DNA of 64,000 nucleotides from Ascidiella aspersa (GCA_963924565.1 OZ004608.1:6076001-6140000); one strand, 5' to 3'; positions 26,213 to 60,359 are shown, counted from the stretch's first letter. Numbers and translations are program-made. The notes: generated by a model from the letters alone, not told the origin.

Positions 26213-29200
26213 TTAGAGGTTAGATTCGTCCCTAAACTCGACGTATCCCGGGTCTTTTTCCTCATTTTCCTGGACTGGAAACACTGGGTTGGGTTTCACG
26301 TAACCGCCTTCTTCTTCTTCGTAAGTACATTCTTCTGGACCTTAAAATACTATGGATTATCATGCAATTTGTTAAAAATTGATAAAGTATTTTTTTCTTA
26401 GGTTTTCTGTATATATTACAAACTTAATAACTTTGGTACATCACTGATTGTTGCTTAAAACGTTTTCTGAATTAAAGCATTTTCATTCTGCAGTGGTGTA
26501 TGAGATTTAAGGAGGCGAGTCATAATTTTAGACGATTAAAATAAAAAATAATTTAGGCTTACTGTGAAATAGAAAACTTCTTAACCTGCTTAATTATGGC
26601 GTAACAATTCCTAGATTTGTCGATATACTTTCGTTACATCTTTTATTAGTTTTTTTTATTATAAGTGTTGCATTCAGCGAAGTGTGAAATTTCAACAGCT
26701 ATTCACTTCGAGTTATTCCCAGATTTATTTAACAGTATTTAAATAAGCTAACAAGCAAAGTTTCGCACATTTAAGGAGTCACAAGAGGAGTTTGCGAATT
26801 TCCGGTGGTAGTTTGGACTGAAAATAGAAACATTTTTCACTCTAGAATCGCGTAATAATCCTCCATTTCTCGGTTCATTTCTTGGCATAGAATCTAGTCT
26901 ATTCGACTGATTTCCTATCCGTTCATTTTGGTGCCAAAACTAAAAGGAGGACTAGGCTTAGTGCACGCAGCATTACGTTTAAAATTGGTGTTAACGTAGA
27001 CATGCTTCGTGTGAGATGTGCTTGCTATGGGAACTTCGTAGGCACTTTCCACAACCACTTCAGAATCTTTTTTTGGGCATCTAGAAATGTAGGGTCTTTT
27101 TAACTCTGGGTAAATGGGCAAGCTATTGGTTTGTGTTAAAGAATAAAATACGGTGAATAAATACTGATGTATTATATGTACAATGTCACACAAACCTTTT
27201 CTTTATATGAAGATCAAATTTTATATTATTTTTAATTTCAAAAATTAATAGTTTCATGAGCATCAGCGTATTGAATTTCTATAAATACCCAAAACACGTT
27301 AAACATAATAATCATAACACATTTCGGTCGGGCATACTTGCGCTTATTGGCGAAAGTGAAAATCTAAACAGTTGTTATGTTTATATTAAAACGTTCTCAC
27401 ATATTTTGAGCAATAGTTTTTATTCGGTTGTATGTCTTTACTTGCCTTATCTGGTGACGTAGGTGAAAAATATGTATGCCAACGGATGCCAACAAGAGAA
27501 GAACAAGAACGACTACCGCTATGGTGAGACCGTGGGCAGATTCCGTTTTAACAGGCCTGTTTTGAGCTGTGAATAAAGCAATAGTTAAGTGTAGTTTTCT
27601 AGGTAAATTTTATTTTCTACAAACACCCTTAAGTAAAAAACGTCTTGAGGAGGGTATGACTAATTTTACCACCTTTTATAGAATCCCGGTACACTAAGAT
27701 ATTCCTATTTTGCCAGCATTCTATCATTAATGCTATTTTTAAACCGCTTTTCGCGTATTGCGTCGCACTATTTTTGGTGGTGGCGCAAAAAGTCTCTTAA
27801 CGGCAACATGTTTTAGGTCCGTGCTCCGCAACCTTTTTCACTTACGGTACACCAACAGACCCTGAACAAATTCAGCGGCACACCTCCTAAATATTTGACG
27901 ACCGACAATGGACAACATAAGCAAAGCGTTTCTGGTTATACGGTTTTACGGTCTTCTAAAAATATTTAAGACAGAGAAGGTGGTTAAATTGTACCCGTAA
28001 TGTAGCGGATGTGGCAACATTAAAGGCTTTCAACAACAAATTCAAAAATTGAAATCCAATAATTGGGTTTTGTACTTTTTTGCCTAATTTATTTTTCCGA
28101 ACAGACTGTTTTTAACAATTTTTTTTTAAGATCATTTTTAACAATCAATGTAACACATTTACTTCATGGGTTTAAAGTGTATGGATAATTATCTTCCTTT
28201 AAACTTTGGTGTAAAGTAAACAGTTAATGTATATTTATACTCCTGGTAGTTGTACGAGTTAAATAAACTATTTTAACATTTAAATTTGGCGATTGAACCT
28301 TACTTAGGTTTTAAACGAGGTTAAAATATAAAGGAAAGTTGTTTTTGCCAAAAGTCACCTTTGAAAAAAGTAAAAGTAAAGCACATCGAGAAGCATCGTG
28401 AAATAAATACCTAATTTAAACACGAAGTTAACTCACGTTTCAAAGTTTTACCCACCCCTATCTGGTTGCCGGTTTATGTGACAAAACCGTACCCCCATCC
28501 AATAGTTTGTGTTAGTTTTCCGGGTTTAAGGTTTTCGCATTGTAAAAATCAATAGTTGATCAAATAAAAACGTTATGGTTTTTATTATTGATATTAGGAT
28601 CTATGCATGTTTAAAAAAATCTCAAACGACTTTAATTATATAGAAGTGCTTAAAGATATGTTTTTACTTCGCGTCTCTTTTTGGCTCTATTAATGATTAT
28701 TTGTGACCAATGTAAAATTATGGCAAAATCACATGAGTCCGAATTGACTTACCTGGTACGCAGCTGGAAACCAAAGTAGTTGGTGCCGTGGTATTAGCTT
28801 TGCCCATGGAGACAGAATCCACTGTGTTCGTTTGTTTTTCGTTGGTTGTAACTGTGGAAGGCGAGGAAGTGACATGCTTTGTTTGTATAGCGCTACTGAT
28901 TGCTGTCACCTTATCTAGACAGAAAATGTTGATTCGCTTTACGTTAACGCGGCGCAATTACGAATTTTATTTAAAGCACGTTTAACTCGCATCTGCTTCG
29001 TACAACTGTATTTTAAACAATGTTTCATGTTTATTAAACACAAACACAAGATCGAGAGTATAACAGTCCTATTAGAATTACGTATTTTGCCAAAATGAAC
29101 TACATGAAACTTCTACGTGATTTTGGAATGTCTTTTGTTGCCTAATTTTACATCACGCTACTTGTCTTAACCAGATCTGGAAGTGAAATGTTTATTATGG

Positions 29201-41615: not shown

Positions 41616-44600
41616 CTAGTTGTTAGATTGTTCTTGGGTCCTAAACTCGACGTATCCCGGATCTTTTTCCTCATTTTCCTGGACTGGAAACACTGGGTTG
41701 GGTTTCACGTAAACGCCTTCTTCTTCGTGAGTACATTCTTCTGGACCTTAAAATACTATGGATTATCATGCAATTTGTTAAAAATTGATAAAGTATTTTT
41801 TTCTTAGGTTTTCTGTATATATTACAAACTTAATAACTTTGGTACATCACTGACTGTTGCTTAAAACGTTTTCTGAATTAAAGCATTTTTATTCTGCAGC
41901 GGTATATGAGAATTAAGGAGACAAGTCATAATTTTAGACGATTAAAATAAAAAATAATTTAGGCTTACTGTTAAATAAACTTCTTGACCTGCTTAATTAT
42001 CGCGTAACAATTCCTAGATTTGTCGATATACTTTCGTTACATCTTTTATTAGTTTTTTTTATTATAAGTGTTGCATTCAGCGATGAGTGAAATTTCAACA
42101 GCTATTCACTTCGAATTATTCCCAGATTTATTTAACAGTTTTTAAATAATCTAACAAGCAAAGTTTCGCACATTTTAAGGAGTTTAGTCCAGAGAATACA
42201 AGAAGAGTTTGCGAATTTCCGGTGGTAGTTTAGATTGAAAATAGAAACAATTTTTTCAGTCTAGAATCGCTTAATATCTTCTCCATTTCTCGGTGTATTT
42301 CGTGGCATAGATTTTAGTCTAATCGACTCATTTCGTATCCGTTCATTTTGGTGCCAACACTAAAAGGAGGACTAGTTATAGTGCACGTAGCATTACGTTT
42401 AAAATTGGTGTTAACGTAGATATGTGATGTGCTTGCTATGGGAACTTCGTAGGCACTTTCCATCACCACTTCAGACTCCTTTTTAGGGAATCTAACAATT
42501 TAGGAAATTTTTAACTCTGGGTAAATGGTCAAGCTATTGATATTAATTACATTTACAATGTCACACAAATCTTTTGTTTATTTGAAGGGCAAATTAGGTT
42601 AATTTATGTCTTTTTACTTTAAAAAATAATAGTTTCATGAGCATCAGCTTATTGAATTTCTATAAATACCCAAAACATGTTAAACATAATAATCATAATA
42701 CGTTTCGGTTGGCCATCCTTGCGCTTATTGGCAAAAGTGAAAATCTAAACAGTTGTTTTGTTTATATTAAAACGTTGTCACCCATCTCGAGCAACAGTTT
42801 TTATTCGGTTGTATGTCTTTACTTGCCTTATCTGGTGACGTAGCTGAAAAATATTTATGCCAACGGATGCCAACAAGAGAAGAACAAGAACGACTACCGC
42901 TATGGTGAGACCGTGGGCAGATTCCGTTTTAACAGACCTGTTTTGAGCTATGAATAGAGCAATAGTTAAGTGTAGTTTTCTAGGTAAATTTTATTTTCTA
43001 CAACACCCTTTGTTCTATGAGTAAAAAACGTCTTGAGGAGGGTATGACTAATTTTACCACTTTTTATAGAATCCCGGTATACACTTATATATTCCCATTT
43101 TGCCAGCATTTTATCATTAATGCCATTTTTAAACCGCTTTTCGTGTATTGCGTCGCATTATTTTTGTCGTGGCGCATTAAAGTGTATTGGCGGCATCAAG
43201 TTTAGGTCCGTGCTCCGTAACCTTTTTTACTCACGATACACCAACAGAGCCTGAACAAATTCGGCGGCACACCTCCGAAATATTTGACGACCGACAATAG
43301 ACAACATAAGCAAATATATTTATGGTTTTACGGGTTCTTCTGAAAACATCTTTAGACGGTTGGGGTGCTCAAATTGCACCCCGTGAAGTAGTGGATAGGA
43401 GAAGATTGAAGGCTTTAAACAGCATATTTCAAAAATGAAATCCAATAATTGGGTTTTGTACTTTTTTGCCTAATTTATTTTTTTGGAAGATGCTGTTTTT
43501 AACAATACTTTTTTAAAGATTATTTTTAACAATCACTGTAATACATTAACTTCGGTTTTAAGCGTATGGATAATTATCTTCGTTCAAACTTTGGTATAAA
43601 GTACACATTTACTGTCTAATTATACTCCTGGTAGTTGTACGAGTTAAATAAACTATTTTAACGTTTAAATTTGGCAATTGAACCTTACTTAGGTTCTAAA
43701 CGAGGTTGAAATATAAAAAAGGAAAGTTGCACACCAAAAAAGGAAAGTTGCACGTCAAAAGTAGCATTTAAAAAAAAGAAAAAAGTAAAGCACATCGAGA
43801 AGCATCGCGACACACATGACATGGTATAGCGGCATAGCAGTTTGCCACGGCACACCGGTTGCGGAGTACTGTTTCAGACGTTGCGTGGAAGTGCTTAAAG
43901 TTAATTAGTTTGGCTTCCTCAGGGCGCAGAACAAAAACTGATACTACGTGTAAAAATAACTCCCTAATTTAAACGCGAAATTAGCGCACGTTGCAAAGTT
44001 TTAACCCACTCGTATTTGGTTGCCGGTATATTTGACAAAACCGTAGCCCGACCCAATAGTTTGTGTTAGTTTTTCGGGTTTCTGGTTTTCGCATTGTGAA
44101 AATTGATAGTTGATGAAATCATAACGTTATGGTTTTTATATTTTATATTAGGATTTGTGCTTGATTAAGAAAGTCTCAAACAACTTTATTCATATGTAAG
44201 TGGTTTAAGATATGTTTTTACTTTGCTTCTCTTTTTGGCTCGATTAATGAATATTTTTTATCAAATGTAAAACCATTGCAAAATCACATGAGTCAGCACC
44301 AACTTACCTGATACAGTGGTGGAAGTGGTTGGAGCCGCGGTGTTAGCTTTGGCAGTAGAAGCGGAATTCACGGTGGTCGTTTGTATTGCTTTGGTTGAAA
44401 CTGAAGTAAACGGTGAAGAAGAGACAGAGTTGGTTTGAATTTTTGCAATGCATGATAAAAAAATTAGTTTTGTTACACATTTTCGTCGCGACAATATATG
44501 TATAGCGCCTTTTTAACGCCTATAGTGAAGTTTTACAAAATTGCAATTTTTCTTGCTTAAACTAGTTATTTTAATTTTTGCACAGTATATTCGGTTATAA

Positions 44601-46417: not shown

Positions 46418-46880
46418 TTGCGTTTTGCGTGGTTATACAAAATGAAACAAACTTTCATACCGTGGGCTCTTCGTCACTTTTGTATAAAAAAATTATCATC
46501 GGAAACTTCAGTCAATATGTGAACGGTAGTTAGCAATTTTTGTATAAAACATTCAATCGTAAATCAGCATTACGTCAGCTTCTTACTAACCCAAAATATT
46601 TTAGGAAGAAATTTCTATATTGTTACTGTCACTATCTAATATCTTTTTAGTGCTAGGATATTAACGCACGTTGCATAAAAGTGAAACATGTTATCTTTAT
46701 TATTACTTGCTTACTACGACTATTATAGGTATTACTTCAAATTCAGTCTTATTCCAACTGTGTTTTATTCCGATTGTGATGTTCTTCTTATCTCGGTCTT
46801 ATGAATGGAATCCGAATTTTCACACATTCCTTCTTTTTGAATTTATTATGGCAAAATCAAAATAAGCAGATTTGTCTTAC

Positions 46881-46963
46881 CTGATAGAGAGGTGGATTCC
46901 AAAGTAGTTGGAGCCGTGATGTTAGCTTTGGAAACGGAAACGAATTTCACGGTGGTTGTTTGT
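46881..46963 (-). pseudogene. Orphan 3' fragment of a mucin stalk exon
   Basis: Reads QTTTVKFVSVSKANITAPTTLESTSLS followed by G|GTAAGA. Its 5' part is replaced by MITE sequence. Confidence 0.65.
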
Positions 46964-47244
46964 TTTGTACTTTTTTCGCCTAATTTATTTTTTCAGAAGA
47001 GACTGTTTTTAACAATTTTTTTAAGATCATTTTTAAAAATCAATGTAATACATTTACTTTATGGGTTTTATGCGTTTTGATAATATTTCTTCAAACCTTG
47101 GTGTATAAAGTACACGGTTACTGTATATTTATACTCCTGGTGGTTGTACGAGTTAAATAAGGTTTTAAACGAGGTTTTTATATTTTACATACGTTTACAA
47201 CAACTGTAATGTACGACGAGCTCATTTGTTTCTCTATATTATTC

Positions 47245-47575
47245 CCCTCTGAGCTTATGTAGCTCAGTTGGTAGAGCGACGGTCTCCGTCTGACCGAGGT
47301 CGTGTGTTCGAACATCACCACAGGCTAGTTTTACGAACAAGATGCAGTAGACAAGAGTGCTATGATTGTTTCTCGACTTGTTACCCTCTGAGGCTGTACA
47401 GCTCACTTGGTAGATCAAAGTTGGAATCTCACCACGGGCTAGTTTTACAAACAAGATGCAGTTGGCAAGAGTGCTATGGTTGTTACTCGATTTGCCTTCT
47501 TTTAACCAGTACAGCTCAGTTGGTAGAGCCACGGTCCCGGTATGGCCGAGGTCGTGAGTTCGAACCTCACCGCAA
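47245..47575 (+). mobile_element. Three tandem tRNA-like (SINE/pseudo-tRNA) units
   Basis: A box tagctcagttggtagagc and B box gttcgaac. Anticodon-like stems cggtc/gaccg and cggtc/ggccg, loops lacking U33. Units 1 and 2 share a 3' tail. Confidence 0.65.
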
Positions 47576-48049
47576 TTTAGACTTTCTAATGCAGAAAATC
47601 CTATGTTATATTAAGGATTATTCAAAAACAGCAAATTCAAAATATTACACATTCTAAAAAAAACTAATTTTACTTCATGTAAATATAACAATGCGAGGTA
47701 CCGGTGTGTTAAGTCGGTCAGTTGGGTGAAAAAAATTTCAGGCGATCCAAGTAGTTTTCAGTAGCTTTAAAATTAAACATTAGATTAGACATGAATTATA
47801 AACCGTGTGCGCTACATAAAGCAAAAAAGCAAAACAAGCTTATCCTGTGTGTATATACATTGCCTATACATTGAAGGAAGATAATTTAGATAGGTTCGGA
47901 AAATAAAGGGCAGGTATAGGTGATCCTATGCGTACGGCATATTTTTTATTGGACAAATCACGCTTAAAACAAGTATGTTAATTTCGTCGTAGTATATATA
48001 GAACGACTTTTGTGACTTTTCAGTTAAGTAATACGTCTGGCAATTTTTA

Positions 48050-48445
48050 AATGGCTCCGGCTTCAGCCCCGGAGTCATAAAACTCAATCCTTTGGCTCCG
48101 GCTCCAGCTCCGGAGCCATCAAACACAGACCCAATGACTCCGGCTCCAGTTCCGGTGCCACCAGTCACTTATTCAATGGCAAGTTTTAAAAATTGCTTTT
48201 GGCTAATTAACGTTGGAGATGGGACAAATTATAATTTCTTAGCTTTAGCACCACAAATTGAAAAATGGCTCCAGCTCCGGCTCCAGCTCCGGCTCCAGCT
48301 CCACAAAAATAATAAAAAAGGCTCCGGCTCCTGCTCCAGCTCCAGCTCCAAAAAAATAATAACAATGGCTCCGGCTCCGGCTCCGGCTCTGGCTCCAGAG
48401 AAAATGCTTAGATCTGGGCTCCGGGGTTCCGGCTCCCCAGTCCTG
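48050..48445 (-). mobile_element. Terminal fragments of the GGAGCC-repeat hAT family
   Basis: 48170-48445 is the reverse-complement homolog of 62583-62830 (terminus CAGGACTGGGGAGCC). A further GGCTCC array lies at 48050-48170. Confidence 0.75.
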
Positions 48446-48488
48446 GTTGAAGGCACCTTTACGTAAAATAGCCAGTTGCTATATTTAC

Positions 48489-48687
48489 CGAGCACATTGG
48501 GAGTCTTGCTTTTTACGCTACTTCCAGCCCAGTTGATCGTCCTACATTCGTACAAACCACCGTTTCCTGAGTGGTTGTTGTTTCTAATGTAAAGAACAGA
48601 GTTGCCAGTTGATCCTTCCTTTGTTGTAGTTAAAACTTGATAAACTACAGTTGATGAACTTGAAGGTACCTCAGCATTGTTTGTTTC
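48489..48687 (-). other. Orphan exon encoding the C-terminal half of an Ig-like domain
   Basis: ttttcag|ETNNAEVPSSSTVVYQVLTTTKEGSTGNSVLYIRNNNHSGNGGLYECRTINWAGSSVKSKTPNVL-G|gtaaat. Matches the L-x-I..G-x-Y-x-C-x3-N-x-A-G pattern of Ig E/F/G strands. Confidence 0.6.
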
Positions 48688-50902
48688 CTGAAAATACTAA
48701 GATTCCATCTCAGTTTACAAACTGTTTTCATAGCAACTGTTTGCTGGTTCGTTACGTTTTGTCAGTATTCTGTTTTACCACCTTTTGTATAGGGACATGA
48801 TTTTTTGTGCTTTTTTTGACGTGTTCCATTTTTTCAAAAAAACAACAACGAAGTTTGGCGATATAATCTTAATTTAAAATAATTTACTTGTTTTTTATTT
48901 ATTTTAATATTAAGTAATAAAATTGGATCTTAATTACAACGACAATGCTCAAACGGTTTACTTAATCACTCTTTCGGTATCGAACAACAATATGTATCAA
49001 TCATCCTTAAACCCAACCACGGAATTAAATTGATGCCTAGAGAATAAAACTATCGACCTCATAGCTTGAGATTACAACAGGGTAGTAACTATATCATTAT
49101 AAAGTGTCTCTCGACCCATTGGTCGCGAAGGTTTTCCGAAAGCTTTAATTGATGATTGGAATACAAATAGGTTGTTACGTCACCGACTTACTTGGTGATG
49201 ACGTCACCGCCTTACTTAGTGATGACGTCAGCAAATATCGGCAAGTAAGGCTTCAGTTATTTACTGAGTTCGTTGCCGGGAAATAGCTTATACAAATAGG
49301 AGAAGCATGTGACTCATTTTAAATGATCCCAACACAACAGGGATACAAATAAACTTTGTAGGCGTCATACTAACATTACGACATTGAACATTGAATTTCA
49401 ATCCTGTTTATTTAATTCTGAACAAGTGTTAATAGTATGGCAGTACAAAAACGAATTCCTTATTATTGTTCAACATACATCTTTGCACGTATTTTAACGC
49501 ATGAAGAAAAATCAAATTTATACTACTTGAACAATACAACGCTAAGTTGAGCATGCAGGAAACTGGATAGCTTACGTTCACGTTAATTTCGAGCAAGATA
49601 TTTGAAAGGAAAAAATACTAACTGTTGAAACATTTTTTTAAATAATAAAATCTCATCGATAGGCGTTTGTAGTTTGACAAAACGTTTGGCCCAAAACATA
49701 TTTAATTATAATGCTTTAGGCTTAAGTCACAAACAAAAACTATGAAAAGTATAATCTAACTGCTTGACAATGGAATACATGTTAAAAGTATTGTTTGTTC
49801 AGGCAAGTTTAGCAAGTTTTAACAACAAATTAGGTTATAAAACATACAAGAAAAATAGGAGCATACACTTAACAAGCTTCACTTCAAACAGGAAGTGCTT
49901 GTCAAGTGATAAATTGCAGCGCGACTATGAGTATCCATACACCATATTTTTTTCGTCTTGACAAAGACTTGGCAACCTCAGTAGCGCAGTATCCAATCAA
50001 TAACTTAACGTGCTTAAATTGTGCTACCGTTGTGAATATACGGGGCCTGTATGACATTAGGTTGGGCATTTTAAGTGGTGATATGCTAACAAGTACTAAC
50101 AGTATGTATAGTTTAATTTGGTATGGAGGATCAAAATTTCAGCACACCTATTTGCCTTTAGCTTCGTGGATTAGGCTTAGCATAAAATATTTAAAAATGA
50201 CTTATAGAAACCAGTTGGCTTAAGAAACCTGCTGTTTTATCTATATAACGGAGTCTAGATACATTCAAGGCAAAGACGCCAAAGCGGTTCGGTTATTTCG
50301 AAAAATATCTCTATATCTTAAATTATACGACAAGAATTCAATTAGGCTTCCATAGACCCCTAAACCGAGTCCAAGTAACCCACCAAGGGGCCCACGGACC
50401 CAAGTTTAACAACCCCTGTGCGTTTCATTCATCGAATTACCAGGGGCGAGAATAGCGTTGCTTGACCACCACCTGGCTAAAAATCGGATTTTTTAAACTA
50501 ATCGGCAGTTTATACTTCACTTTAGTGAACCTTGAATTCATAAATATTTCCCCCTTATGTGTACGATTTTATCACGTATGTTTTGCCGGCTTTATAAAAT
50601 GTTCATGGAGATAAACTAATAATATTACAGAGGTTGTAAACGTGACAAAATTAAAGAAAACACAATGCAGTTTCTCAAACGGTATACATTATTATGAGCG
50701 TCAATATTCAAAACCGTATAATTTTAAAATGTTTGACGCGGACACGCTTTATATACATTTTAAAAATAACTGTATATAACAATGCTGAAAATTGACAACC
50801 GAAGAAAGAAATAGATTTAAACAATAGAAAGATACAGAGCCTAATTTAAAATTAACTCGGCGATAACAAATCAGGCAAATATTGTTACAGTAATCTCTAC
50901 AG

Positions 50903-51332
50903 CAGCGGTTCCCAAACTGGGGTTCGTAGAGCAGTTTCAGATGATTCGCAAGGAGAATTAGTCTTTAAGTTTTTAAATATTAGGCTTGAAAAAATGTTTT
51001 GAAACTTTTTCACAGTGGAAAAAAAATGTTTAGAAAATGTTTTTAAACTTTTTCTGTCATCATTATTAGTCCATAGTTATGCTTTATTATTAGATCATAT
51101 AACGTTTTTTATAATGCCTCTTGCGACATAAAGCATCTATTATGCTGTGTTAACTGCTATAAGCGAATTTTTAGCATTCGTTAGAAAGTTGTTACATTGG
51201 AAGAATCGTGACTGTAGTAGTGTACTACAAGAAACATGGGTCAATTAAGCCTTGAATTTTTATAGGGCCGCGAAATATAAAAACAATTGCGATCCACCAG
51301 GTAAGATTTTTAGAAAAGTTTGAGAACCGCTG
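50903..51332. mobile_element. hAT/Charlie-like MITE
   Basis: TIRs cagcggttcccaaact / agtttgagaaccgctg. Flanks ctctacag / atctggag are a partial 8-bp TSD. Confidence 0.8.
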
Positions 51333-51416
51333 ATCTGGAGCTAAATGCCGGCAAACTAAACAAGTGGGTAGCACTGAACAGAAAACAACCTCCGAGCAGT
51401 TGTTTTTGGATGATTC

Positions 51417-54400
51417 CTAAGTACGTGAAGTTTGTTGGGTTAGGTTTTGGTCGCTTGAAGTTTCCTGGCCTGAAACGCCAGAAGTTTTGCCCACGCATGA
51501 TATCTTCTTGCGAATGACGTCATTCTTGACACAGTAGCAATAGAACACCGCCAATCCCTGAAGCCCGTTCACCAGCGTGTGGATGTACGTCATCACTTCT
51601 GACGTCATCTCGTCGCCGAGACCTGGAGCAAAAATAGCTTCAATTATGTGGTAAATTTATTAGAAGATAAACGGCTTGCAGTGCCTGAAACTAAATACAA
51701 TTCTAAAGCAATTTCATCCAAATTTTAGCATTTTGGGAATATTGTCATCCTTATTACAAACGTAGCTTTGTTTAGGTTTGCCACAAAGCCATTCATTTTC
51801 TTTAAATTGCATTTCATTCTTAAAATCCTAAAAATCACTATATTTTTCTAAAATGTTTTGATTTTATGTGCAGCTTAAATAATTTGTTTAGAAAGTGCTG
51901 TGAGATAGACAATTTTTTTATTTTTTTTTGTATTGCGTTTCGCCTGACATTTATTCTGTTTTCATTTATAATTATCTTCAAAAGACGCCAAGTGATTATA
52001 TTGTAGGTCTTCAAAAACCGATCAATTTCCTTTGAAAAGTATTATACTGTCTTTGAATTTATTCATGAAAATACGAAACAACCCTGGTTCCCATTGACAA
52101 ATTTTACCTGTAAAAAATCCAAGAACCCACGTTGTTCCAAGAACCAACATCAAGAAAAAGAAGGCCTTGAAAAAGGTCTTCGCGTCTTGATCCACTTCCT
52201 CCGGATTTCTCCGCTTCTTGTTCTTCCTGGAGGAAAGGAGCACCCACGATCCGATGAGAGCAGAGAGGAAGTTGACCAGCAGACAAATCGCGATCGGCAC
52301 GACCACAGTGAGAATGAACACGTTGGTGCCAGGATCCAACCAGCATCTATCGAATTTGCTTCCCCCTTGTTGTGTAACGTTAATGTCCTTGACCTTGATG
52401 TAGTTTCCTGTTGGAAGACCAGCGGCGAGCGCCGATCCGACCACAAGTGCCGGGATGAACCATCCCACCACCAAGAACACCTTTAATCGCTTTTGAGAGT
52501 CTTGTACCTGAAATCCAATCGGGTTCGTCATGGCCATTGTCATTCGGATTCCGTCGATCGTAAACCAGCAACCTAAAAAAAACAAAATAAGGCTCAGCTA
52601 AGCTAAAAATGGAAAAGATGAAACACCGAATTTAAATTAGAAACAACATAGGCCATAAAGATTGATTAAGAACCAAAACTGTTCATAATACAAAAGGAAA
52701 AAACAACAACAAACGTTCTGTAGGTGTCCTTAATGTATTAAATTAACGAATGTAAACAGAACTAAACTATAGTAATCTCAATATTGCAATTAAGATAATA
52801 AATAGACAACAAATTGCTGAAAATTAGACGGTTATAAAAAAAACTCAAGATAATTTACCTTCAAGATATTCAATAGAAAACAAATAGTTGAAAACTAAAC
52901 ACTTTAAATTAAGAAAATATGAATAAAATAGGCATCACAAGTTAAAAGGTGAATGAATGTAGTTGGAACAGAAACATCTATGTCATGAGGTTAAACCGAC
53001 AGAATTTTCCAGGATTCAAACTTTCCAAAAAAGGACGGAGAAAGAGAAAAACGTGCAAATATTTATTTCCCAATTAGTTGTCACCTGACGCAATCAAGAA
53101 GTAGTGGATGCTGGCAGAGAGGAAGACACATCCGACTTGATGAAGGATTGCTGCATCCTGGAGGAGATTGGAGACGTGGAGGAGGAGGAGGGAGAAGACG
53201 ACGCAGAGCTGGATCAGGGTCCGGTCGCTGGCGATCTGCCGCTTGTGACGTAACAGCAGCGCGATGCTGAGCACGAGGAAGCAAACTGAGATCGACTCGC
53301 AAACGTACGAGGTGACCTAAAAATAAATGCACTATTTTTAAAACAACGGAGAAAAAATAAACTAAATATTATAATAATAGTCTTAGGGAAAAATTTGTGC
53401 TATAGCGTGAAATAATGTAATGTCTTTTGATAGTATAATAATATTAAAATATGGGTTTTAATTTGACGCAGCATTAGAATTACTTCAACATTTAAAGATA
53501 TAATTTATCGCTTTCAAAGTTTTTTCAATTTCGAGTTTTTTCTATCATGTCTGCCATTTACTTTTTTAAGTTTTCTGATTTTTGAATTTGCTTTATTTTG
53601 ATTTTTTGCAACTGTGTTTTGTTTTGTTAAAGTGCTGTCTTAACTATTTGAGGTAACGTTCTGATTAATTAAATCGTTTTCGAAACCGGTTGAATTTTTC
53701 AAAAGTAAGGCATTCCTGTATGACAAGAAAGTGTGTTTAAAAGTTGATTGAGTAAATTAACTAAAAAAGTTTTGTTTGGGGATTTGGCAATTTAGCATTA
53801 AATGTTTAGGGTTATCTTTATATAATTTACAAAAAGAATAAAATTTGGTTGTTTCAGTTAATTCTTAGGAATTTCGTTGCTCCTAAACAAATCACCCTAA
53901 TAAAAGGTTTAGTGTGAAATCACATGAGAGATATGTCTTTCTCTGTTTGTTTTTATATTGAATTTTTGTTCCAATACATTATATTATAATTTGTCAATCT
54001 CTTACTTTAACTCCAAGTGAAATGGCTCTAGTTTTCATTGAGAGCAGAATAGAAAACACGGTGAGGTGATCACATTCGCAGTGGACACGGTCGCCTATCA
54101 ATTTGCTACGGCATCCAGCTGTTGAATAAGCCGACGATCTGTCGATGAAACTGCAAGCATACTCCACTTTCTGCAAGCTAAGCTTTGCCGACGATATTAC
54201 ATTGTTTTGGCAAACCCCGCGGGATGTCTGTTCGGCGTTTGTAACTTGCCGCGAAAATGCGACGGAGCCCTTTAGGCTGGCACCAGTTTTGGCCTTGTAG
54301 CCTGACACGCTGGTGAAAACCTTGGGGCTTAGTTCAGCATAACGTTTACTGGAATCTTGCTGACCGCTATTGACAAAAGCGCATGATGTTAAATTGGTTT

Positions 54401-54700
54401 TAAAGACAACTTCAAATATTATGATAGCCCCTGATAAATTGCCGGCGATCTGGAAGGTAGCATTTACCGAGGATTTCTCAAAATCGACCAACCCTGACTC
54501 GATTGTTCCGCCGCTTGACGTTACAAGTTTCACCACAACTTGTACGCTGACTTCTGTGAGGTTGTATTGTAATGAATAGTTGCCTTTCGGAAGTTGCCTC
54601 AGGTTGTTGTTTTCCAATGTGTTAAGTTTTTGTAAAGAAACAATATCATCACCGTCAGACGCCGTTGTGTTGACCAGCTTCCTTATTTCACGATCGATTG
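51417..54700 (-). CDS. Adhesion GPCR module: GAIN/GPS + 7TM
   Basis: Exons 54700-54006 (ends CSFI..YSTAGC..CECDHL/TVFSILL, GPS with intact HL/T site), 53316-53085 (TM1-3, HYFLIAS), 52572-52108 (CWF..GWFIP..CWL..LGTTWVLG), 51622-51417 (NGLQG..stop). Phases 1/0/1/1 are consistent. No start codon or signal peptide of its own. Confidence 0.9.
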
Positions 54701-55626
54701 CTACAACCAAATATTATTATTTTATTATTCGAAAACTAATCATACAGCTTACAAGGCATTATTTCGCATTAAATAGGTGCAAATCTTATGTTGAAGTTTT
54801 GTTTGTGCGAAATTATAAAAAGATAACATTACAAATAGGATACCATGATTTTAAACAAAACGTGCAACTGCTTCCTCGACCTAACTTCTTAAATATTAAC
54901 AAAACGAACATTTCTATATTATTTGGCTTGTCGGTCTGATATTATATACGTTCATATAGCAAGAGAGGGACTGGGCTATACGTTGCGCACGTTTTGTACA
55001 CATTTCTCACTCTTAAGCGAGAAACTGCTCATTACGCCAGAATAGAAAGAAGTCATGTGCTCCCAGACAGAAAAAACTGGTCTCTTTCTATGAGAGAAAA
55101 ACGGAGTAATGAGAGCGCGTCTCAAGCGAGCGTCTCTTATACATGGTAATAGCAATTTGTTTAGGTTGTAAACAATACACAGGAAAGTTGTTTTTGTCAA
55201 AGGTAACCATTCAATAAAAGAAAAACAGTAAAGTACATCAAAAAGCATCGCGTTACACCTGACATGGTTTAGCGCCATAGCAGTTTGCCGCGGCACACCG
55301 GTTGCGGATTACTGTTTTAGACGTTGCGTCCTATCTGGCTGCCGGTATAGTTGACATACCATACCCCGACCCAATTGTTTGTGTTAGTTTTCTGGGTTTC
55401 AGGTTTGCGCATTGTGACAATTAATAGTTGATTGAAATAATAACGTTATGGTTTTAATTATTTATCGTAGGATATGTGCATGTTTAAAAAAATTCCTAAA
55501 CAACTTTATTCGTATATAAGTGGTTTGTTATATGTTTTTACTTTGCGTATCTTTTTGGCTCGATTAATGTATATTTTTTTCCAATGTAAAACTATGGCAA
55601 AATCACATGAGTCAGAACCAACTTAC

Positions 55627-57883
55627 CGGATACAGTGGTGACAGTGTTGGAAGTAGTTGGAGCCGTGGTGTTAGTTTTGGCAAAGGAAACAAAATCCACG
55701 GTGGTCGTTTGTTTTGTGTTGGTTGTAACTGAAGTGAATGATCGGGAAGAGACAGAGCTGGTTTGCATCGCAATACTTGTCTTACCCAGATCTGGAAGTG
55801 AAATGTTCACTAGGGCTTCACTTTAACACTAAAGCAACTTAACGCGAAAGCGAATCGTATATGCAACTAAATAAGTTTAACTCGTTTTGGGGTGGTCTGT
55901 TGGCTTTAATTTTTGGAATGCATGATAAGGTTTACTGTTTTTATTAAATATGGCAAAACATCCCTAGTATAACGGCCCTATTTGAAGTACAATGTTGGCA
56001 TACTTAAACTAGATAAACTCAAGTTCGACGCGTATTTTAAAAGTAGTTTTGTTACATATTTTCTACGCCACAATATAGCTATAGCGTCTCTCTTAGCGCT
56101 TATAGTGAATTTTTACCAAATTGCAAATTTTCCTGGTTAATCAAGTTATTATATTTTTTGCACAGTATATATGGTTATAGTGTTTTAAGTAAACCACGCA
56201 ACTTGGTGACGTTTCTCCAAAAAAATGTAAGGACACCCTTAAACAGAAATCCCTGATGCGTCTAAAATAACTCCCTAATTTAAACGCGAAATTAACGCAC
56301 GTTTCAAAGTTTTAACCCACTCCAATATGGTTGCCGGTTTATGTGACAAAACCGTAGCCCGATCCAATTGTTGCGTTGGTTGTCTGAGTTTTAGGTGAAT
56401 TGTTAAAATTGATAGTTGATTAAAACAATAACATATTGTTTTTTATATTTATATTGGAGTGTGTGCATGTTTAAAATAATCTCAAACAACTTTATTCATA
56501 TATAAGTGTTTTAAGATATGTTTTTACTTTGCTTCTCTTTTTGGTTCGATTAATGAATATTTTTTTACCAATGTAAAACCATTGCAAAATCTCATGAGTC
56601 AGAACTAACTTACCTGATACAGTGGAAGTAGTTGGAGCCACGGTGTTAGCTTTGGCAGATGAAGCGGAATTCACGGTGGTCGTTTGTGTTGCGTTGGTTG
56701 TAACTGAAGTGAATAGCGAGGAAGTGACAGAGCTCGTTTGCACAATACATTTCTCAACAAGGCCTGGAAGCGAATGTTTATTAGGTCTTCACTTTAACAC
56801 TAAAGAAACTTAACGCGAATCTTATATGGAACTAAATTAGTTTAAATCGCTATTTTGGGGTGATCTGTTGGCTTGAATTTTTGCAATGCACGACAAGGTT
56901 TACTGTTTTTATTAAATATGGCAAAACATCGCTTGAATAACGGCCCTATTTGAAGTACAATATTGGCCTACCTAAACAGATAAACTATAAGTTCGACGCG
57001 TTTTTTGAAAGTAGTTTTGTTACACATTTTTGTCGTGACAATATAGCTATAGCGTCTCTTTTAACCCTTTTACAATTTTTCTTAGTTAATCTAGTTATTA
57101 TATTTTTTGCACTGTATATATGGTTATAGTGTTTTAAGTAAAAGTTATAGAAAATTAAAAAAAATAGCATGACGCAACTTGGTTACGTTTGTCCGAAAAT
57201 TTTAAAGTCACCCTTAAACAGAAATGCCTAATCCTTGCCACATAATTTTAGCTATTCTGATCTATGATTTGTAGCTAAATGATTTGTAGCATTTTTCAAT
57301 TGAGATGTCCGGTTTGTGTTTATTTGTTTTATTTAAAAAACCAATAGAATATATTCACTTACCAATGGTTCTCTGGCATATGTACCCGAAGTTTGTGGTG
57401 GAGCAAGGAATGTCATACCACAGTGAATTGGTACTCCAGGAAATACCCATAGTGACGCAATTCTCATGAACACCAGTATTTCCTCCGTTGTCAGGTTGCT
57501 GTATTCCCCATGACGTATACATCAAACCTGTTCCATCCAACCATCGGAACTCACCACCATTTGCATTCCGCTTCAAACCGATGTAAAATCCCTTGTTTGG
57601 AACTGGAAACATGCGTTGGGTAAGGCCATAAGTGATGTAAAACTACAACTATAAGTGGAAGATTTTGTCACAAACCTGTATATTTGGTCAGAAATTTCTG
57701 AATCGTTGAAGAGTTGACTTTTGCCAAAGTCGCGTTCAGCTTACAACAAGCCGCACTTGCTCCATTAAAATTTGTCGAATCGTTCACAGCAATATAGTAT
57801 TCCTTCCCGTTTAACTGGTGCCAAGTAACAGCTGTTGTTGCAGTCAGAAGATAACACGCAACTAGTAATGAAGTGATTCGCAT
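55627..57883 (-). CDS. Lectin head B4 (signal, QPD CTLD, two mucin stalk exons); probable N-terminus of the adhesion GPCR
   Basis: Exons 57883-57676, 57602-57363 (QQPDNGGNTGVHENC..WYDIPC), 56763-56614 and 55791-55627, all open. The last donor G|GTAAGT is phase 1. No TM exon follows before 54700. Confidence 0.8.
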
Positions 57884-60359
57884 TATCGTGAATCAATTTT
57901 TAAATATTCTAAACGAAACTAAAAACAAAAATTAAAAGACTAAGCCGATTTTTGTTCCAGTGATTGCATTGAAAATTGATTTACCGACCACTTCAAACTT
58001 ATGCACTATTAGCAACGGAAAACTCATAAATATATTTGCAAAATATAACCTTACATCATGGTCGACGTTGAGTAAAGTCAAGTATTTTCTACTCTACACT
58101 GTTTTCAATATCTCGTTGTTGTGGCACCAGTATATAGCCTATGCTAGATGAAATGGTGTTTCCCAGGTTCACTGTTTGTCAGTTTAATTCTGACATATAA
58201 AAGACTGCTGCAGTTGAGCATGAATTTTAAGTTCATATCACCGGCAATAAACACGATCTATTGTGAATACCCATAGAGTTTTGCGTGGTTATACAAAATG
58301 AGGCACACCTGCATACCGTGGGCTCTTCGTCGTTATCTCAAGTTACGTCATTCTCTGGTAGGTTATTAAAGAGGCGGTAAGGCAAACGGCATCAAGCCTA
58401 CATCGCGCCTAAAGTTGTATTATATGCGCGTTCTTAATAACAGAGTAAATTAACTGAAATCGCGTATTGAAAGCCAAATTACAGCATTTAATCATGACGA
58501 AACTATTTAAAAATTTATGCTAAAAAGCTATCACAAACAAAGGAATCCGTGAATTTACTGATTACGCTAAAAATTCGCAGCTTTTTAAAGACAATCAGCA
58601 TAAAAGTTTAACTTTGCAAAGGCGATGACTTTACTTTGATTTTACGGTTAAGCAAACGTTGCGTTCAACGTCAGACAAACCTGTTAGAAATAAAAATTGA
58701 TTAAAGGTTAAAACCGCTGTAATAAACATGATATTTTACGAACTCTGCTTAAATTTTGCGTGATTAAACACACTGTAAAACTCCATTCAGCTGTGGCCTC
58801 AATCAAATTTAAATTATATTTTCGGGAATGTTAGTTGTACGATATTGGTTTAAGTGTCCTGATGATTAATTAAAGTAGGTTTAGCAACCGCTACACAGGT
58901 CGAACGACGCGGAAACAAATGGCTTAAAGGCACCAAAGAGAAAAGTTGGTTGTGTTACGCTTCCTTAAAACTGCAATATATGTGAACTAATTTGAGTAAA
59001 GATTTTAGTTATCGATGTACAATTACTACACATAAAAGTAATAAAAATAACAAAACGCTTCCATACGTTTTCTTAAGACACAAAACGCATCATAAAGTTC
59101 GAAAGGAAGTATCACCGTGTCCGCCAGCCTTTGCAGCAATCCGGCATTTTTAACCCCTAGGTTAAGAGTATGAAATGATCATCCGAAACTTCAGTCTATA
59201 TGTGAACGGTAGTTTGTACTTTTTGTATAAAACATTGAAACGCAAGTCAGCATTTCGTAAGCTTCTTACAAACCCAAAACATTTTTGAAAGAAATTTCTA
59301 TATTGTTACTGTCACTATCTAATATCCTGCGAAACATTATTGTAAGTTTGCCCGAATTTCGTTTTTCTGGTTGTCCACTGTGGTATTTAATAAAAGCTTA
59401 CATATAGCAATGAAGTTTCAAGCTATCTGATTGATCTTTTTAATTTTGTGTATTGAGTGCTTAGCTTATCTGATATATGTAGTCTTCATATGGGTTGTAA
59501 AACTGTAATAAAACCCTATATTGTATTAATGCTCAGTGTTAAAACTCTTGATTTGCACCAGCAGAGCTCTTTATTCTTTTCTGAAATACAATTCAGTGTC
59601 GGGTTTCGGCTTTTACAGCATTGTGGTCGTTTTAGTCAAACCCTTTTAGTTCCTTGTTATAACGTAATAGTTTTCACTCTACAGAAACAATGGCCTTATG
59701 TAAAAGACTTGATGTAATATCCGTCATTTGGCACCTATGTTCGGCAATGAAGTATGTAATGGGGAAACAAGCGGTGACAGCGCGTATACAAGAGAGAGAA
59801 GAGAAAAGAGAAAAGAGTTCACTTCGCGTTTACGCATGCGGAAGGAAAATTACAGGGCACCTACCGGACAATAAATAAAGAACTAATTAAAATATATTCC
59901 ACCAGCTTCGTCAGTATATCTCAGCAAATACGACAACTTAGTTGTATGGGCATAAAAACAAAAATCACCAAATTAAAACCATGAAACTCCACTAAACCAT
60001 AATTATGTCCAAAACAACAACAAAAGTATAATAACGCATCAGCAAACAGCTGAAAGGCGGCAAAGGAAAAACCGAAAGAAAAGGTGAAGTAAAGGCAGAA
60101 ACACGATACCAACACGAAAATAAGAACACACAAAAAACACGGTAACGCCAACACATTTGGGGCAGTAACATTTTTGAATCTTAATTTTGGCTTTAATTTT
60201 ATTCGTCCACCTTATGTCTTCGCAAGTATCTATGCATGAAAGACCGGGGCTGCGCAACAAATTGTAATTCAACGTAATATTTGGAAATTATTTAGTTGTT
60301 AAGGTTTGTTGTATATCGTAATGATGCTACATCGCTGTGATTTCACTTGAACCATCGTT

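What the first reader, a model, noticed from the sequence alone, without database searches (positions are those of the whole stretch)
51417..57883. Lectin-adhesion-GPCR chimera: one lectin head wired to two signalling backbones
Seen: the B4 exons (signal, QPD CTLD, two stalks) are close paralogs of B1-B3, including introns and upstream DNA, but no single-pass TM exon follows. The next exon, about 0.9 kb on, is the GAIN/GPS exon (ttgtag|CA ATC, phase 1), matching the phase-1 stalk donor, and the frame is open through 7TM to 51417. The GPCR module has no other start or signal peptide here. Known: adhesion GPCRs are ectodomain-stalk-GAIN-7TM and cleave at HL/T, exposing a TxFxxL tethered agonist, which is intact here (TVFSILL). 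CTLD-bearing adhesion GPCRs exist in invertebrates, so the domain mix alone is not new. Inference: a galactose-type lectin head signals through Tyr motifs in B1/B2 and through G proteins in B4, with donor and product still side by side.
Basis: partly seen in the sequence, partly recalled or inferred. Interest (0 to 1): 0.92.

Follow-up and report, generated by a model that had tools for sequence, protein, structure and literature searches.

The report
Lectin-headed adhesion GPCR made by exon shuffling
An 8 kb piece carrying the GAIN-7TM exons of an adhesion GPCR was inserted into an intron of a C-type lectin receptor gene, giving an open 786-residue lectin-stalk-GPCR reading frame that now exists in three copies; it is a clean, traceable case of a known process, and no RNA evidence yet shows the fusion is expressed.

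Summary
On the minus strand, eight GT-AG exons (57883 to 51417) give one open 786-codon frame. It encodes a signal peptide, a C-type lectin domain with QPD, two Thr/Ser stalk exons, a GPS exon with HL|TVFSILL, and a 7tm_2 seven-helix core.

The lectin exons, introns and upstream DNA are 83-85% identical to the window paralogs B1-B3. B1-B3 each keep a single-pass TM exon; B4 has none.

- **How it arose:** lectin-intron homology stops at about 55160 and resumes at about 47160. The roughly 8 kb between matches adhesion-GPCR paralogs on contig C8, starting sharply at 55158-55162. Those paralogs carry FN3/Ig exons upstream instead. So the 3' half of a C8-type GPCR gene landed in a phase-1 lectin intron.
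- **Copies:** two more copies on the same chromosome share the junction. Their GPCR halves are 96.5-98% identical to this one, but their lectin heads only about 84%. This points to recombination in the stalk.
- **Selection:** changes since the fusion are 15 nonsynonymous to 12 synonymous (omega about 0.38, p = 0.013).
- **Missing:** the one RNA run gave no reads on the GPCR exons or the key junction.
- **Corrections:** WND is WYD, so galactose binding is unproven. Lectin-bearing adhesion GPCRs are already known. Other notes from this scan report further lectin-GAIN GPCR clusters elsewhere in this genome.

The parts
57676..57883 (-). E1: start codon, signal peptide and N-terminal third of the C-type lectin domain. 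Donor in phase 1.
   Evidence: Lectin_C, 19.3 bits, profile positions 2-34. Hydrophobic N-terminus at residues 1-21.
57363..57602 (-). E2: the rest of the C-type lectin domain, with QPD, ENC and WYD (in place of WND). Phase 1 to 1.
   Evidence: Lectin_C, 42.9 bits. (alignment with paralogs; WYD is invariant in the B type).
56614..56763 (-). E3: first Thr/Ser-rich stalk exon, 150 nt, phase 1 to 1. The recombination breakpoint with the sister copies lies at about 56740, inside this exon.
   Evidence: The homologous exon in copies A and B has lost its acceptor and has a GC donor.
55627..55791 (-). E4: second Thr/Ser-rich stalk exon, 165 nt, phase 1 to 1. Its donor is the upstream side of the fusion junction.
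   Evidence: stalk residues 151-254 are 48% Thr+Ser. The donor is conserved in all three copies.
55161..55626 (-). Lectin-derived half of intron 4, homologous to the post-stalk intron of B1-B3.
   Evidence: B4 55174-55765 against B1 9109-9819, and likewise B2 and B3..
47160..55160 (-). Inserted block of about 8 kb, derived from a C8-type adhesion-GPCR gene. It holds 460 nt of the donor's intron, exons E5-E8 and about 4.2 kb of 3' flank. A 13-19 nt lectin-intron stretch (GTTTAMAACCT core) stands on both sides of it.
   Evidence: lectin homology jumps from 55174 to 47160. (homology to all C8 copies starts at 55158-55162). (junction alignment).
54006..54700 (-). E5: GAIN-like region ending in the GPS (four Cys, HL|T cleavage motif, TVFSILL tethered-agonist core). 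Acceptor in phase 1, donor in phase 0.
   Evidence: GPS, 30.2 bits. (motif invariant in close paralogs). (PDB hits are all adhesion-GPCR GAIN/GPS); the fold model is too poor to confirm the GAIN fold.
53085..53316 (-). E6: TM1, TM2 and the first half of TM3.
   Evidence: 7tm_2, profile positions 7-90..
52108..52572 (-). E7: second half of TM3 through TM6.
   Evidence: 7tm_2, 62.8 bits, profile positions 93-223. (best PDB relatives are ADGRG2, ADGRG6 and ADGRE1).
51417..51622 (-). E8: TM7, a short cytoplasmic tail and the stop codon.
   Evidence: 100% identical in protein in the two sister copies.
46962..47160 (-). Remainder of the lectin intron downstream of the insert, contiguous with 55174 and above in B1-B3. 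Homology to B1-B3 ends at 46962, before their TM exon.
   Evidence: B4 46962-47160 against B1 8860-9050, B2 28067-28266, B3 43453-43651..
46814..46967 (-). Stalk-exon-like fragment, followed by the upstream region of B3. It marks a second rearrangement that removed the TM exon and tail exons of B4.

Best explanation
This is a lineage-specific adhesion GPCR gene that was created by exon shuffling.

Shown from DNA: about 8 kb from a C8-type adhesion-GPCR paralog was inserted into the phase-1 intron that follows the stalk exons of a B-type C-type-lectin receptor gene. The piece starts in the middle of the intron before the donor's GAIN exon and runs through the 7TM exons and the 3' flank. The lectin gene's own TM and tail exons are gone.

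Inferred: transcription starts at the lectin promoter, and the E4 donor (55627) splices to the GAIN-exon acceptor (54700). The product would be a 786-residue protein made of signal peptide, CTLD, a roughly 100-residue mucin-like stalk, GAIN/GPS and 7TM. By analogy with other adhesion GPCRs, the GPS would cleave at HL|T. Ligand binding or pulling on the glycosylated lectin ectodomain would then expose the TVFSILL tethered agonist and activate the 7TM core.

Also shown from DNA: after the fusion the gene was copied twice on the same chromosome. Recombination in the repeated stalk exons and introns has since paired the same GPCR body with lectin heads that are about 16% diverged.
For: - **Open frame:** eight GT-AG exons give an open frame. 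The frames are also open in both sister copies if the decayed E3 is skipped, at 735 and 734 aa.
- **Domains:** confirmed exon by exon.
- **Insertion:** B1-B3 intron sequence that is contiguous in those genes is split in B4 at about 55160 and 47160. Homology to all seven C8 copies begins at 55158-55162.
- **Donor family:** C8 paralogs carry FN3 (39.7 and 42.0 bits) and Ig exons upstream instead. In the tree, the three C2 copies form a 100/100 clade sister to C8a/b (88/91), inside the C8 group when rooted on C6.
- **No own start:** no donor exon upstream of the GAIN exon came along, and E5 has no in-frame Met before the GPS. The lectin exons are therefore the only visible start and signal peptide.
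- **Selection after the fusion:** among the three copies there are 12 synonymous and 15 nonsynonymous changes, against a neutral synonymous share of 0.235 (binomial p = 0.013). Omega is 0.25-0.38, the same as in the C8 paralogs at 0.3-0.5.
- **Exons versus introns:** GPCR exons diverge less than introns, 1.4-1.7% against 2.4-2.8%.
- **Independent DNA:** contigs from two DNA runs of one study bridge the 55160 junction (55062-55305 and 55116-55361), and one of them also bridges the E5 acceptor (54612-54969).
Against: - **No transcript evidence:** the one RNA run of this species (about 6% read) gave a single read pair. It was a spliced E1-E2 read from a paralog. There was nothing on E3-E7 and no junction read; E8 lay outside the laid stretch.
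- **No database protein:** no spliced protein of this lineage is in the protein libraries.
- **Small selection sample:** the test rests on only 27 changes, and gene conversion between the copies complicates the counting.
- **GAIN fold unconfirmed:** the GAIN fold upstream of the GPS could not be confirmed (AF2 mean pLDDT 43).
- **Lectin head:** it evolves fast (omega about 0.7) and lacks the Asn of WND.
- **Phase match is weak evidence:** the upstream ectodomain exons inspected in two C6 paralogs appear to end in phase 1 as well (reading of the ORFs).
Confidence: 0.65

Rival explanations
1. Two transcription units lie on one strand. The lectin exons make a truncated, secreted stalked lectin or a non-coding remnant that ends in intron 4. 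The GAIN-7TM exons are expressed from an unrecognised first exon or promoter of their own, or as an N-terminally truncated receptor.
For: - No junction reads.
- Intron 4 holds an open stretch with internal Met codons at 54976-55296. It spans repeat-derived sequence, and a weak phase-1 GTATAA donor can be read in it (my reading).
- One DNA pool shows a structural polymorphism in intron 4.
Against: - The candidate stretch lies over repeat-like intron sequence. Its lectin-derived 5' third recurs in the B1 intron, and its GPCR-side part includes a repeat dispersed genome-wide.
- No donor-gene exon came along with the insert.
- E5 has no in-frame Met before the GPS.
- The E4 donor and the E5 acceptor are conserved in all three copies.
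Confidence: 0.2
2. The fusion is a dead by-product of segmental rearrangement: an untranscribed or untranslated relic whose frames are still open only because it is young or homogenised by gene conversion.
For: - No RNA reads on E3-E7.
- Stalk exon E3 has decayed in copies A and B.
- Between the window copy and copy A there are 7 nonsynonymous and 0 synonymous changes.
- Pseudogenised relatives exist (TGA in C8:22801047).
Against: - The C2 branch has dS of about 0.09-0.11 since it split from C8, yet 529 codons remain free of stops and frameshifts in all three copies, with omega about 0.35. Some of that branch may predate the fusion.
- Changes since the fusion show an excess of synonymous substitutions (p = 0.013).
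- Splice sites are intact.
- Conversion from functional C8 genes cannot explain this, because identity to them is only 75-86%.
Confidence: 0.1
3. Assembly artefact: the lectin and GPCR halves were joined wrongly in a repeat-rich tandem array.
For: The region is a tandem array of 80-98% similar copies with dispersed repeats at the junction.
Against: - The same junction is assembled three times in different flanking contexts.
- Contigs from DNA runs X1 and X2 (one study) bridge 55160 and the E5 acceptor, though either run may be the sample the assembly was made from.
Confidence: 0.03

Closest known systems
C-type-lectin-bearing adhesion GPCRs of amphioxus (Nordstrom et al. 2008, PMC2246102)
   Same: A Lectin_C domain in the N-terminus of a GPS-containing class B2 receptor. 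That paper lists Lectin C-type among the novel N-terminal domains of amphioxus adhesion GPCRs.
   Different: Here the lectin head comes from a neighbouring family of single-pass lectin receptors, and the breakpoints can be identified. The ectodomain is minimal: one CTLD plus a mucin stalk. No orthology to the amphioxus genes was shown.
Vertebrate ADGRG subfamily (GPR56/ADGRG1, GPR97/ADGRG3, ADGRG2, ADGRG6)
   Same: These are the best solved-structure matches for both the GPS (ADGRG3 E = 1.8e-5, ADGRG1 E = 5.3e-5) and the 7TM exon (ADGRG2 E = 2.7e-5, ADGRG6). They share a short GAIN region, the HL|T site and a T-x-F-x-x-L tethered agonist.
   Different: Similarity is weak (about 25-27 bits). 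Outside the GPS the GAIN region is not recognisable by sequence. ADGRG receptors have no CTLD. Subfamily membership was not established.
Classical phase-1 exon shuffling of extracellular modules (Patthy's 1-1 rule; from my own knowledge)
   Same: A module set bounded by phase-1 introns was inserted into a phase-1 intron of another gene for an extracellular protein, and the frame is preserved.
   Different: Such events are usually inferred from old domain architectures. Here the recipient paralogs (B1-B3), the donor paralogs (C8) and the junction are all still readable at 75-86% identity.
Sister paralogs in this genome: FN3/Ig-headed (C8) and VWA-headed (C6) GAIN-7TM genes
   Same: Same four-exon GAIN-7TM body and exon boundaries, with 60-85% protein identity in the GAIN exon.
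   Different: They carry different ectodomain exons upstream: FN3 and Ig, or VWA and a stalk. There is no B-type CTLD within 6.3 kb upstream.

Membership tests
Adhesion GPCR (class B2) | GPS motif with four Cys and the H-L|T/S cleavage triad directly before TM1 | tested here: met
   Pfam GPS at 30.2 bits against a cut-off of 22.5. The profile hits only adhesion-GPCR GAIN/GPS chains in the PDB. C..C..CxC-DHL|TVF is invariant in the close paralogs. HL|T lies at residue 466 and TM1 at about 490.
Adhesion GPCR (class B2) | Secretin-type (7tm_2) seven-helix core | tested here: met
   7tm_2 at 22.4 bits (E6) and 62.8 bits (E7), covering profile positions 7-223 of 250. Six hydropathy peaks plus TM7 in E8. 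PDB matches are ADGRG2, ADGRG6 and ADGRE1.
Adhesion GPCR (class B2) | Full GAIN fold (subdomains A and B) enclosing the GPS | tested here: inconclusive
   The AF2 model built from 18 paralogs has a mean pLDDT of 43.4. It predicts beta strands at 47-101, 143-151 and 196-210, but is too poor for a fold search. Sequence matches cover only residues 164-219.
Adhesion GPCR (class B2) | Adhesion-type ectodomain on the same polypeptide as GAIN-7TM | tested here: inconclusive
   The frame is open and the phases match. There are no junction reads, and no reads at all on E3-E7, in the single RNA run.
Adhesion GPCR (class B2) | Autoproteolysis at the GPS and activation by the tethered agonist | not testable with these tools
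   Needs a Western blot of the expressed receptor and signalling assays.
C-type lectin domain | Lectin_C profile match and the four conserved Cys | tested here: met
   Lectin_C at 42.9 bits (E2) plus 19.3 bits (E1). The domain is split by an intron. The Cys residues are visible.
Ca2+-dependent galactose-type CTLD | QPD tripeptide at Ca2+ site 2 | tested here: met
   QPD is present in the window copy, in both sister copies and in B1/B2.
Ca2+-dependent galactose-type CTLD | WND motif, whose Asn and Asp complete Ca2+ site 2 | tested here: not met
   It reads W-Y-D in all five B-type sequences aligned. Sugar binding and specificity are therefore unproven.
Gene fusion by exon shuffling | Identifiable donor and recipient paralogs, defined breakpoints and compatible intron phases | tested here: met
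   (breakpoints at about 55160 and 47160; the donor clade is C8). Phase 1 on both sides.
Gene fusion by exon shuffling | A chimeric transcript | tested here: inconclusive
   no informative RNA reads; no spliced protein in the libraries.

The most novel reading that the evidence does not exclude
The GAIN-7TM body may work as a portable signalling cassette. Homologous recombination in the repeated mucin-stalk exons and introns would repeatedly give it new heads from the neighbouring array of fast-evolving lectins. The same family of lectin heads would then be paired with Tyr-motif single-pass tails (B1-B3) and with a G-protein-coupled body (B4 and its two copies). This would be a paired-receptor-like, diversifying recognition system built on adhesion GPCRs.
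Probability: 0.15. Interest if true: 0.75.

Novelty: new member of a known kind. Interest (0 to 1): 0.45.

Why it matters
Adhesion GPCRs are thought to have gained their varied ectodomains by exon shuffling, but the events are usually too old to reconstruct. Here the recipient gene family, the donor gene family, both breakpoints with a short flanking duplication, and the later head exchange are all still legible. That makes it a good teaching and test case for how a new receptor architecture is born.

If the fusion is expressed, it would also give a simple natural construct of one lectin domain, one stalk, a minimal GAIN region and a 7TM core. Such a construct could be used to ask whether glycan binding can drive tethered-agonist signalling.

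The case is not surprising in kind. Lectin-headed adhesion GPCRs have been described, and this genome holds many GAIN-7TM genes with varied heads.

Tried and rejected
- **RNA support:** The look-up of sequencing runs found one RNA run of the species. Read laying over 52000-57990 gave only one partial read pair, from a paralog's spliced E1-E2, and nothing on the GPCR exons. This is uninformative and is not evidence of silence.
- **Protein libraries:** the E5 search of 1.84 billion representatives gave one close hit. It is a 233-aa open-frame fragment from a single 1281-nt Logan contig, with no name and no context. All other hits had E above 1e-9.
- **Structure of E5:** mean pLDDT was 43, too low for a fold search, so none was run.
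- **Distant paralogs:** CTLD-like open frames lie upstream of the GAIN exon in L028-L032. Pfam gave only sub-threshold Lectin_C, E = 0.026 for L029 and 0.068 for a similar frame in the C8 paralog L019. I treat this as suggestive only.
- **3' breakpoint on the donor side:** The 47160 end is therefore defined only from the lectin side.
- Database work was done exon by exon by reference. Joining was done only inside scripts, from the window file, for frame, hydropathy and dN/dS counts.
- **Misassembly:** considered and rejected (see rival explanations).
- **Alternative first exon:** the open stretch at 54976-55296 was rejected as a likely first exon. It lies over repeat-like intron sequence shared with the B1 intron and with a dispersed repeat.


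Full report
**1. What is there**

The window is C2:6076001-6140000 of a 308 Mb eukaryotic assembly. It is AT-rich, with about 35% GC.

On the minus strand I find eight exons, all with GT donors and AG acceptors:

| Exon | Coordinates | Content |
|---|---|---|
| E1 | 57883-57676 | start, signal peptide, start of the lectin domain |
| E2 | 57602-57363 | rest of the lectin domain |
| E3 | 56763-56614 | stalk |
| E4 | 55791-55627 | stalk |
| E5 | 54700-54006 | GAIN-like region and GPS |
| E6 | 53316-53085 | TM1 to first half of TM3 |
| E7 | 52572-52108 | second half of TM3 to TM6 |
| E8 | 51622-51417 | TM7, tail, stop |

Joined inside a script from the window file, they give 2361 nt and 786 codons with only the terminal stop. 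E1 to E4 all end in phase 1 and E5 begins in phase 1. The E4 donor and the E5 acceptor are 927 nt apart.

Pfam, run exon by exon by reference, gives:
- Lectin_C on E1 (19.3 bits) and E2 (42.9 bits)
- nothing on the two stalk exons, which are 48% Thr+Ser
- GPS on E5 (30.2 bits, cut-off 22.5)
- 7tm_2 on E6 (22.4 bits) and E7 (62.8 bits)

A profile of 18 paralogous E5 sequences hits only adhesion-GPCR GAIN/GPS chains in the PDB: ADGRG3, ADGRG1, ADGRF1, ADGRD1 and ADGRL3. E7 alone hits ADGRG2, ADGRG6 and ADGRE1.

The cleavage motif and agonist core (DHL|TVFSILL) are invariant in the close paralogs. They lie about 20 residues before TM1.

**2. The lectin half is a B-family paralog that lost its membrane anchor**

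- E1-E4, their introns and the upstream DNA are 83-85% identical to B1 (about 11241), B2 (about 30302) and B3 (about 45609). One upstream stretch reaches 93%.
- B1, B2 and B3 each have a single-pass TM exon, at 8317, 27528 and 42909.
- No such exon exists downstream of B4 or in its intron 4.

**3. How the chimera arose**

In B1-B3 the intron after the stalk exon is continuous: in B1, 8860-9050 is followed by 9109-9263. In B4 the two halves lie at 46962-47160 and at 55174-55329. So about 8 kb has been inserted.

A short stretch of the lectin intron, with a GTTTAMAACCT core and 13-19 nt long, stands on both sides of the insert. This could be a target-site duplication or a microhomology.

The GAIN exon has at least 78 relatives in this genome:

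| Location | Protein identity of the GAIN exon |
|---|---|
| contig C8 | 81-85% |
| contig C6 | 56-76% |
| C1, C3, C4, C7 | 35-40% |

DNA homology between the window and all C8 copies starts sharply at 55158-55162. It runs through the GAIN and 7TM exons into the 3' flank. Among the C8 copies themselves, homology continues further upstream than this. So 55160 is a real breakpoint and not simply the limit of detection.

Upstream of their GAIN exons the C8 genes carry FN3 exons (39.7 and 42.0 bits) and an Ig exon. The C6 genes carry VWA exons and a Thr-rich stalk.

A maximum-likelihood tree of the GAIN-7TM codons puts the three C2 copies in one clade (100/100). That clade is sister to C8a/b (88/91), inside the C8 group, with C6 outside.

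Conclusion: the 3' half of a C8-type adhesion GPCR, without any of its own ectodomain exons, was placed into a phase-1 intron of a lectin receptor gene. A second rearrangement at 46962 removed the lectin's TM and tail exons.

This agrees with an earlier first-stage note (s1-801700), which I tested here.

**4. Three copies and a head exchange**

Two further copies lie on the same chromosome, at C2:6.02 Mb (A, locus L013) and C2:6.20 Mb (B, locus L014). They have the same exon order and the same junctions.

Divergence between the window copy and A changes along the gene:

| Region | Divergence, window copy vs A |
|---|---|
| GPCR exons and introns | 0-0.9% |
| GPCR-side half of intron 4 | 1.7% |
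| lectin-side half of intron 4 | 3% |
| E4 and intron 3 | 5-6% |
| E3 | 11% |
| CTLD exons | about 16% |

A and B are about 2% apart nearly everywhere, including their heads.

The tree therefore changes along the gene. In the GPCR part the window copy groups with A. In the stalk, A groups with B. The breakpoint is near 56740, inside E3. This is the signature of recombination or gene conversion in the repeated stalk exons and introns. Its result is the same GPCR body joined to clearly different lectin heads.

In A and B, stalk exon E3 has lost its acceptor and has a GC donor. Because E3 is a symmetric phase 1-1 exon, skipping it leaves the frames open, at 735 and 734 aa.

**5. Is the fusion used?**

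Evidence in favour:
- Among the three copies, which all share the fusion, the GPCR codons show 12 synonymous and 15 nonsynonymous changes. The neutral synonymous share would be 0.235 (p = 0.013). Omega is 0.25-0.38, the same as among the C8 paralogs at 0.3-0.5.
- The C2 branch since the split from C8 has dS of about 0.09-0.11 and omega of about 0.35, with no stop or frameshift in 529 codons.
- Exons diverge less than introns.
- Since the GPCR half appears to be translated, it needs a start codon and a signal peptide. The insert brought none, and E5 has no in-frame Met before the GPS. The lectin exons are the only candidates in sight.

Evidence against, or missing:
- The one RNA run available (about 6% read) gave only one read pair. 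It was a spliced E1-E2 read from a paralog, with 11 unlike letters at 57592-57602. That supports the E1/E2 boundary for the family and nothing more. E8 lay outside the laid stretch.
- No spliced protein of this lineage is in the protein libraries.

I therefore put 0.65 on a true chimeric mRNA, 0.2 on separate transcription units, 0.1 on a dead relic and 0.03 on misassembly. Against misassembly, contigs from two DNA runs of one study bridge the 55160 junction, and one of them also the E5 acceptor.

**6. Corrections to the interpretation**

- **'Galactose-type' is not established.** QPD is present, but the WND motif reads WYD in every B-type copy. One Ca2+ and sugar ligand is therefore missing.
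- **The heads are paralogous, not the same.** Those paired with the Tyr tails and with the GPCR body are 79-82% identical in protein.
- **The GPCR donor family is on another contig.** It does not sit beside the product.
- **The GAIN fold was not confirmed.** Outside the GPS, the AF2 model had a mean pLDDT of 43.

**7. Comparison and novelty**

- C-type-lectin-bearing adhesion GPCRs were reported in amphioxus (PMC2246102).
- Invertebrate adhesion GPCRs that fall outside the nine vertebrate subfamilies are well known (PMC6900090).
- Within this genome, the GAIN-7TM body occurs with FN3/Ig, VWA and CTLD-like heads.
- Two earlier notes from this scan report similar clusters on other pieces of the genome (s1-801668, s1-790886).

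The architecture is thus a new member of a known kind. Its value is the unusually legible origin: donor, recipient, breakpoints, flanking duplication and the later head exchange can all be read.

**8. Limits**

Noticed in passing
window 47252-47589: A tRNA-Thr(CGT)-like sequence at 47252-47327, plus tRNA-derived direct repeats (77 nt and 75 nt, 81-87% identical). Together they look like a SINE-like cluster at the 3' end of the inserted block.
   Followed up: partly
window 48054-48398: A minisatellite of GCTCCGGCTCCAGCTCC-type units, with 8 copies of a 38-nt register. It sits in the 3' part of the insert.
   Followed up: no
window 54800-55060: DNA pool X2 has zero depth at 54800-54999. It also has a contig whose 255 letters before 55053 are unlike the window. 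X1 covers the stretch. This is probably an indel or transposon polymorphism inside intron 4.
   Followed up: no
window 55001-55134: A dispersed repeat of about 100-130 nt, with at least 30 copies on all large contigs at 73-92% identity. It lies 24 nt inside the 5' end of the inserted block, and all C8 paralogs have it at the same place.
   Followed up: partly
L013:5617-5763 and L014:5601-5735: In the two sister copies, the first stalk exon has lost its acceptor through a deletion of about 110 bp and has a GC donor. The gene frame stays open if the exon is skipped.
   Followed up: yes
G000:C8:22800902-22801571: One C8 GAIN-exon copy carries an in-frame TGA and is split into two matches. It is probably a pseudogene. 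The exon matches of C6 copies L021 and L023 hold 2 stops and 1 stop.
   Followed up: no
L028-L032 (C1, C3, C4, C7), about 400-2400 nt upstream of the GAIN exon: These distant paralogs, at 35-40% GAIN identity, have an open frame just upstream with a W-x-W-x-DGS...C...C...C pattern reminiscent of a CTLD C-terminal half. Pfam Lectin_C is only sub-threshold, E = 0.026 for L029. Most of these paralogs read HH|T rather than HL|T at the GPS; L027 keeps HL|T.
   Followed up: partly
L025:9388-9774 (C6): An open frame with an EPN tripeptide and a CTLD-like Cys pattern lies about 2 kb upstream of the VWA exons of a C6 GAIN-7TM gene. Pfam gave no hit.
   Followed up: partly
They were not analysed further.
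   Followed up: no
L029 (gene-sense orientation) 818-1678: A long (AGCAAC)n-type microsatellite gives Ser-Asn or Leu-Thr runs of more than 200 codons. It lies upstream of a C3 paralog.
   Followed up: no
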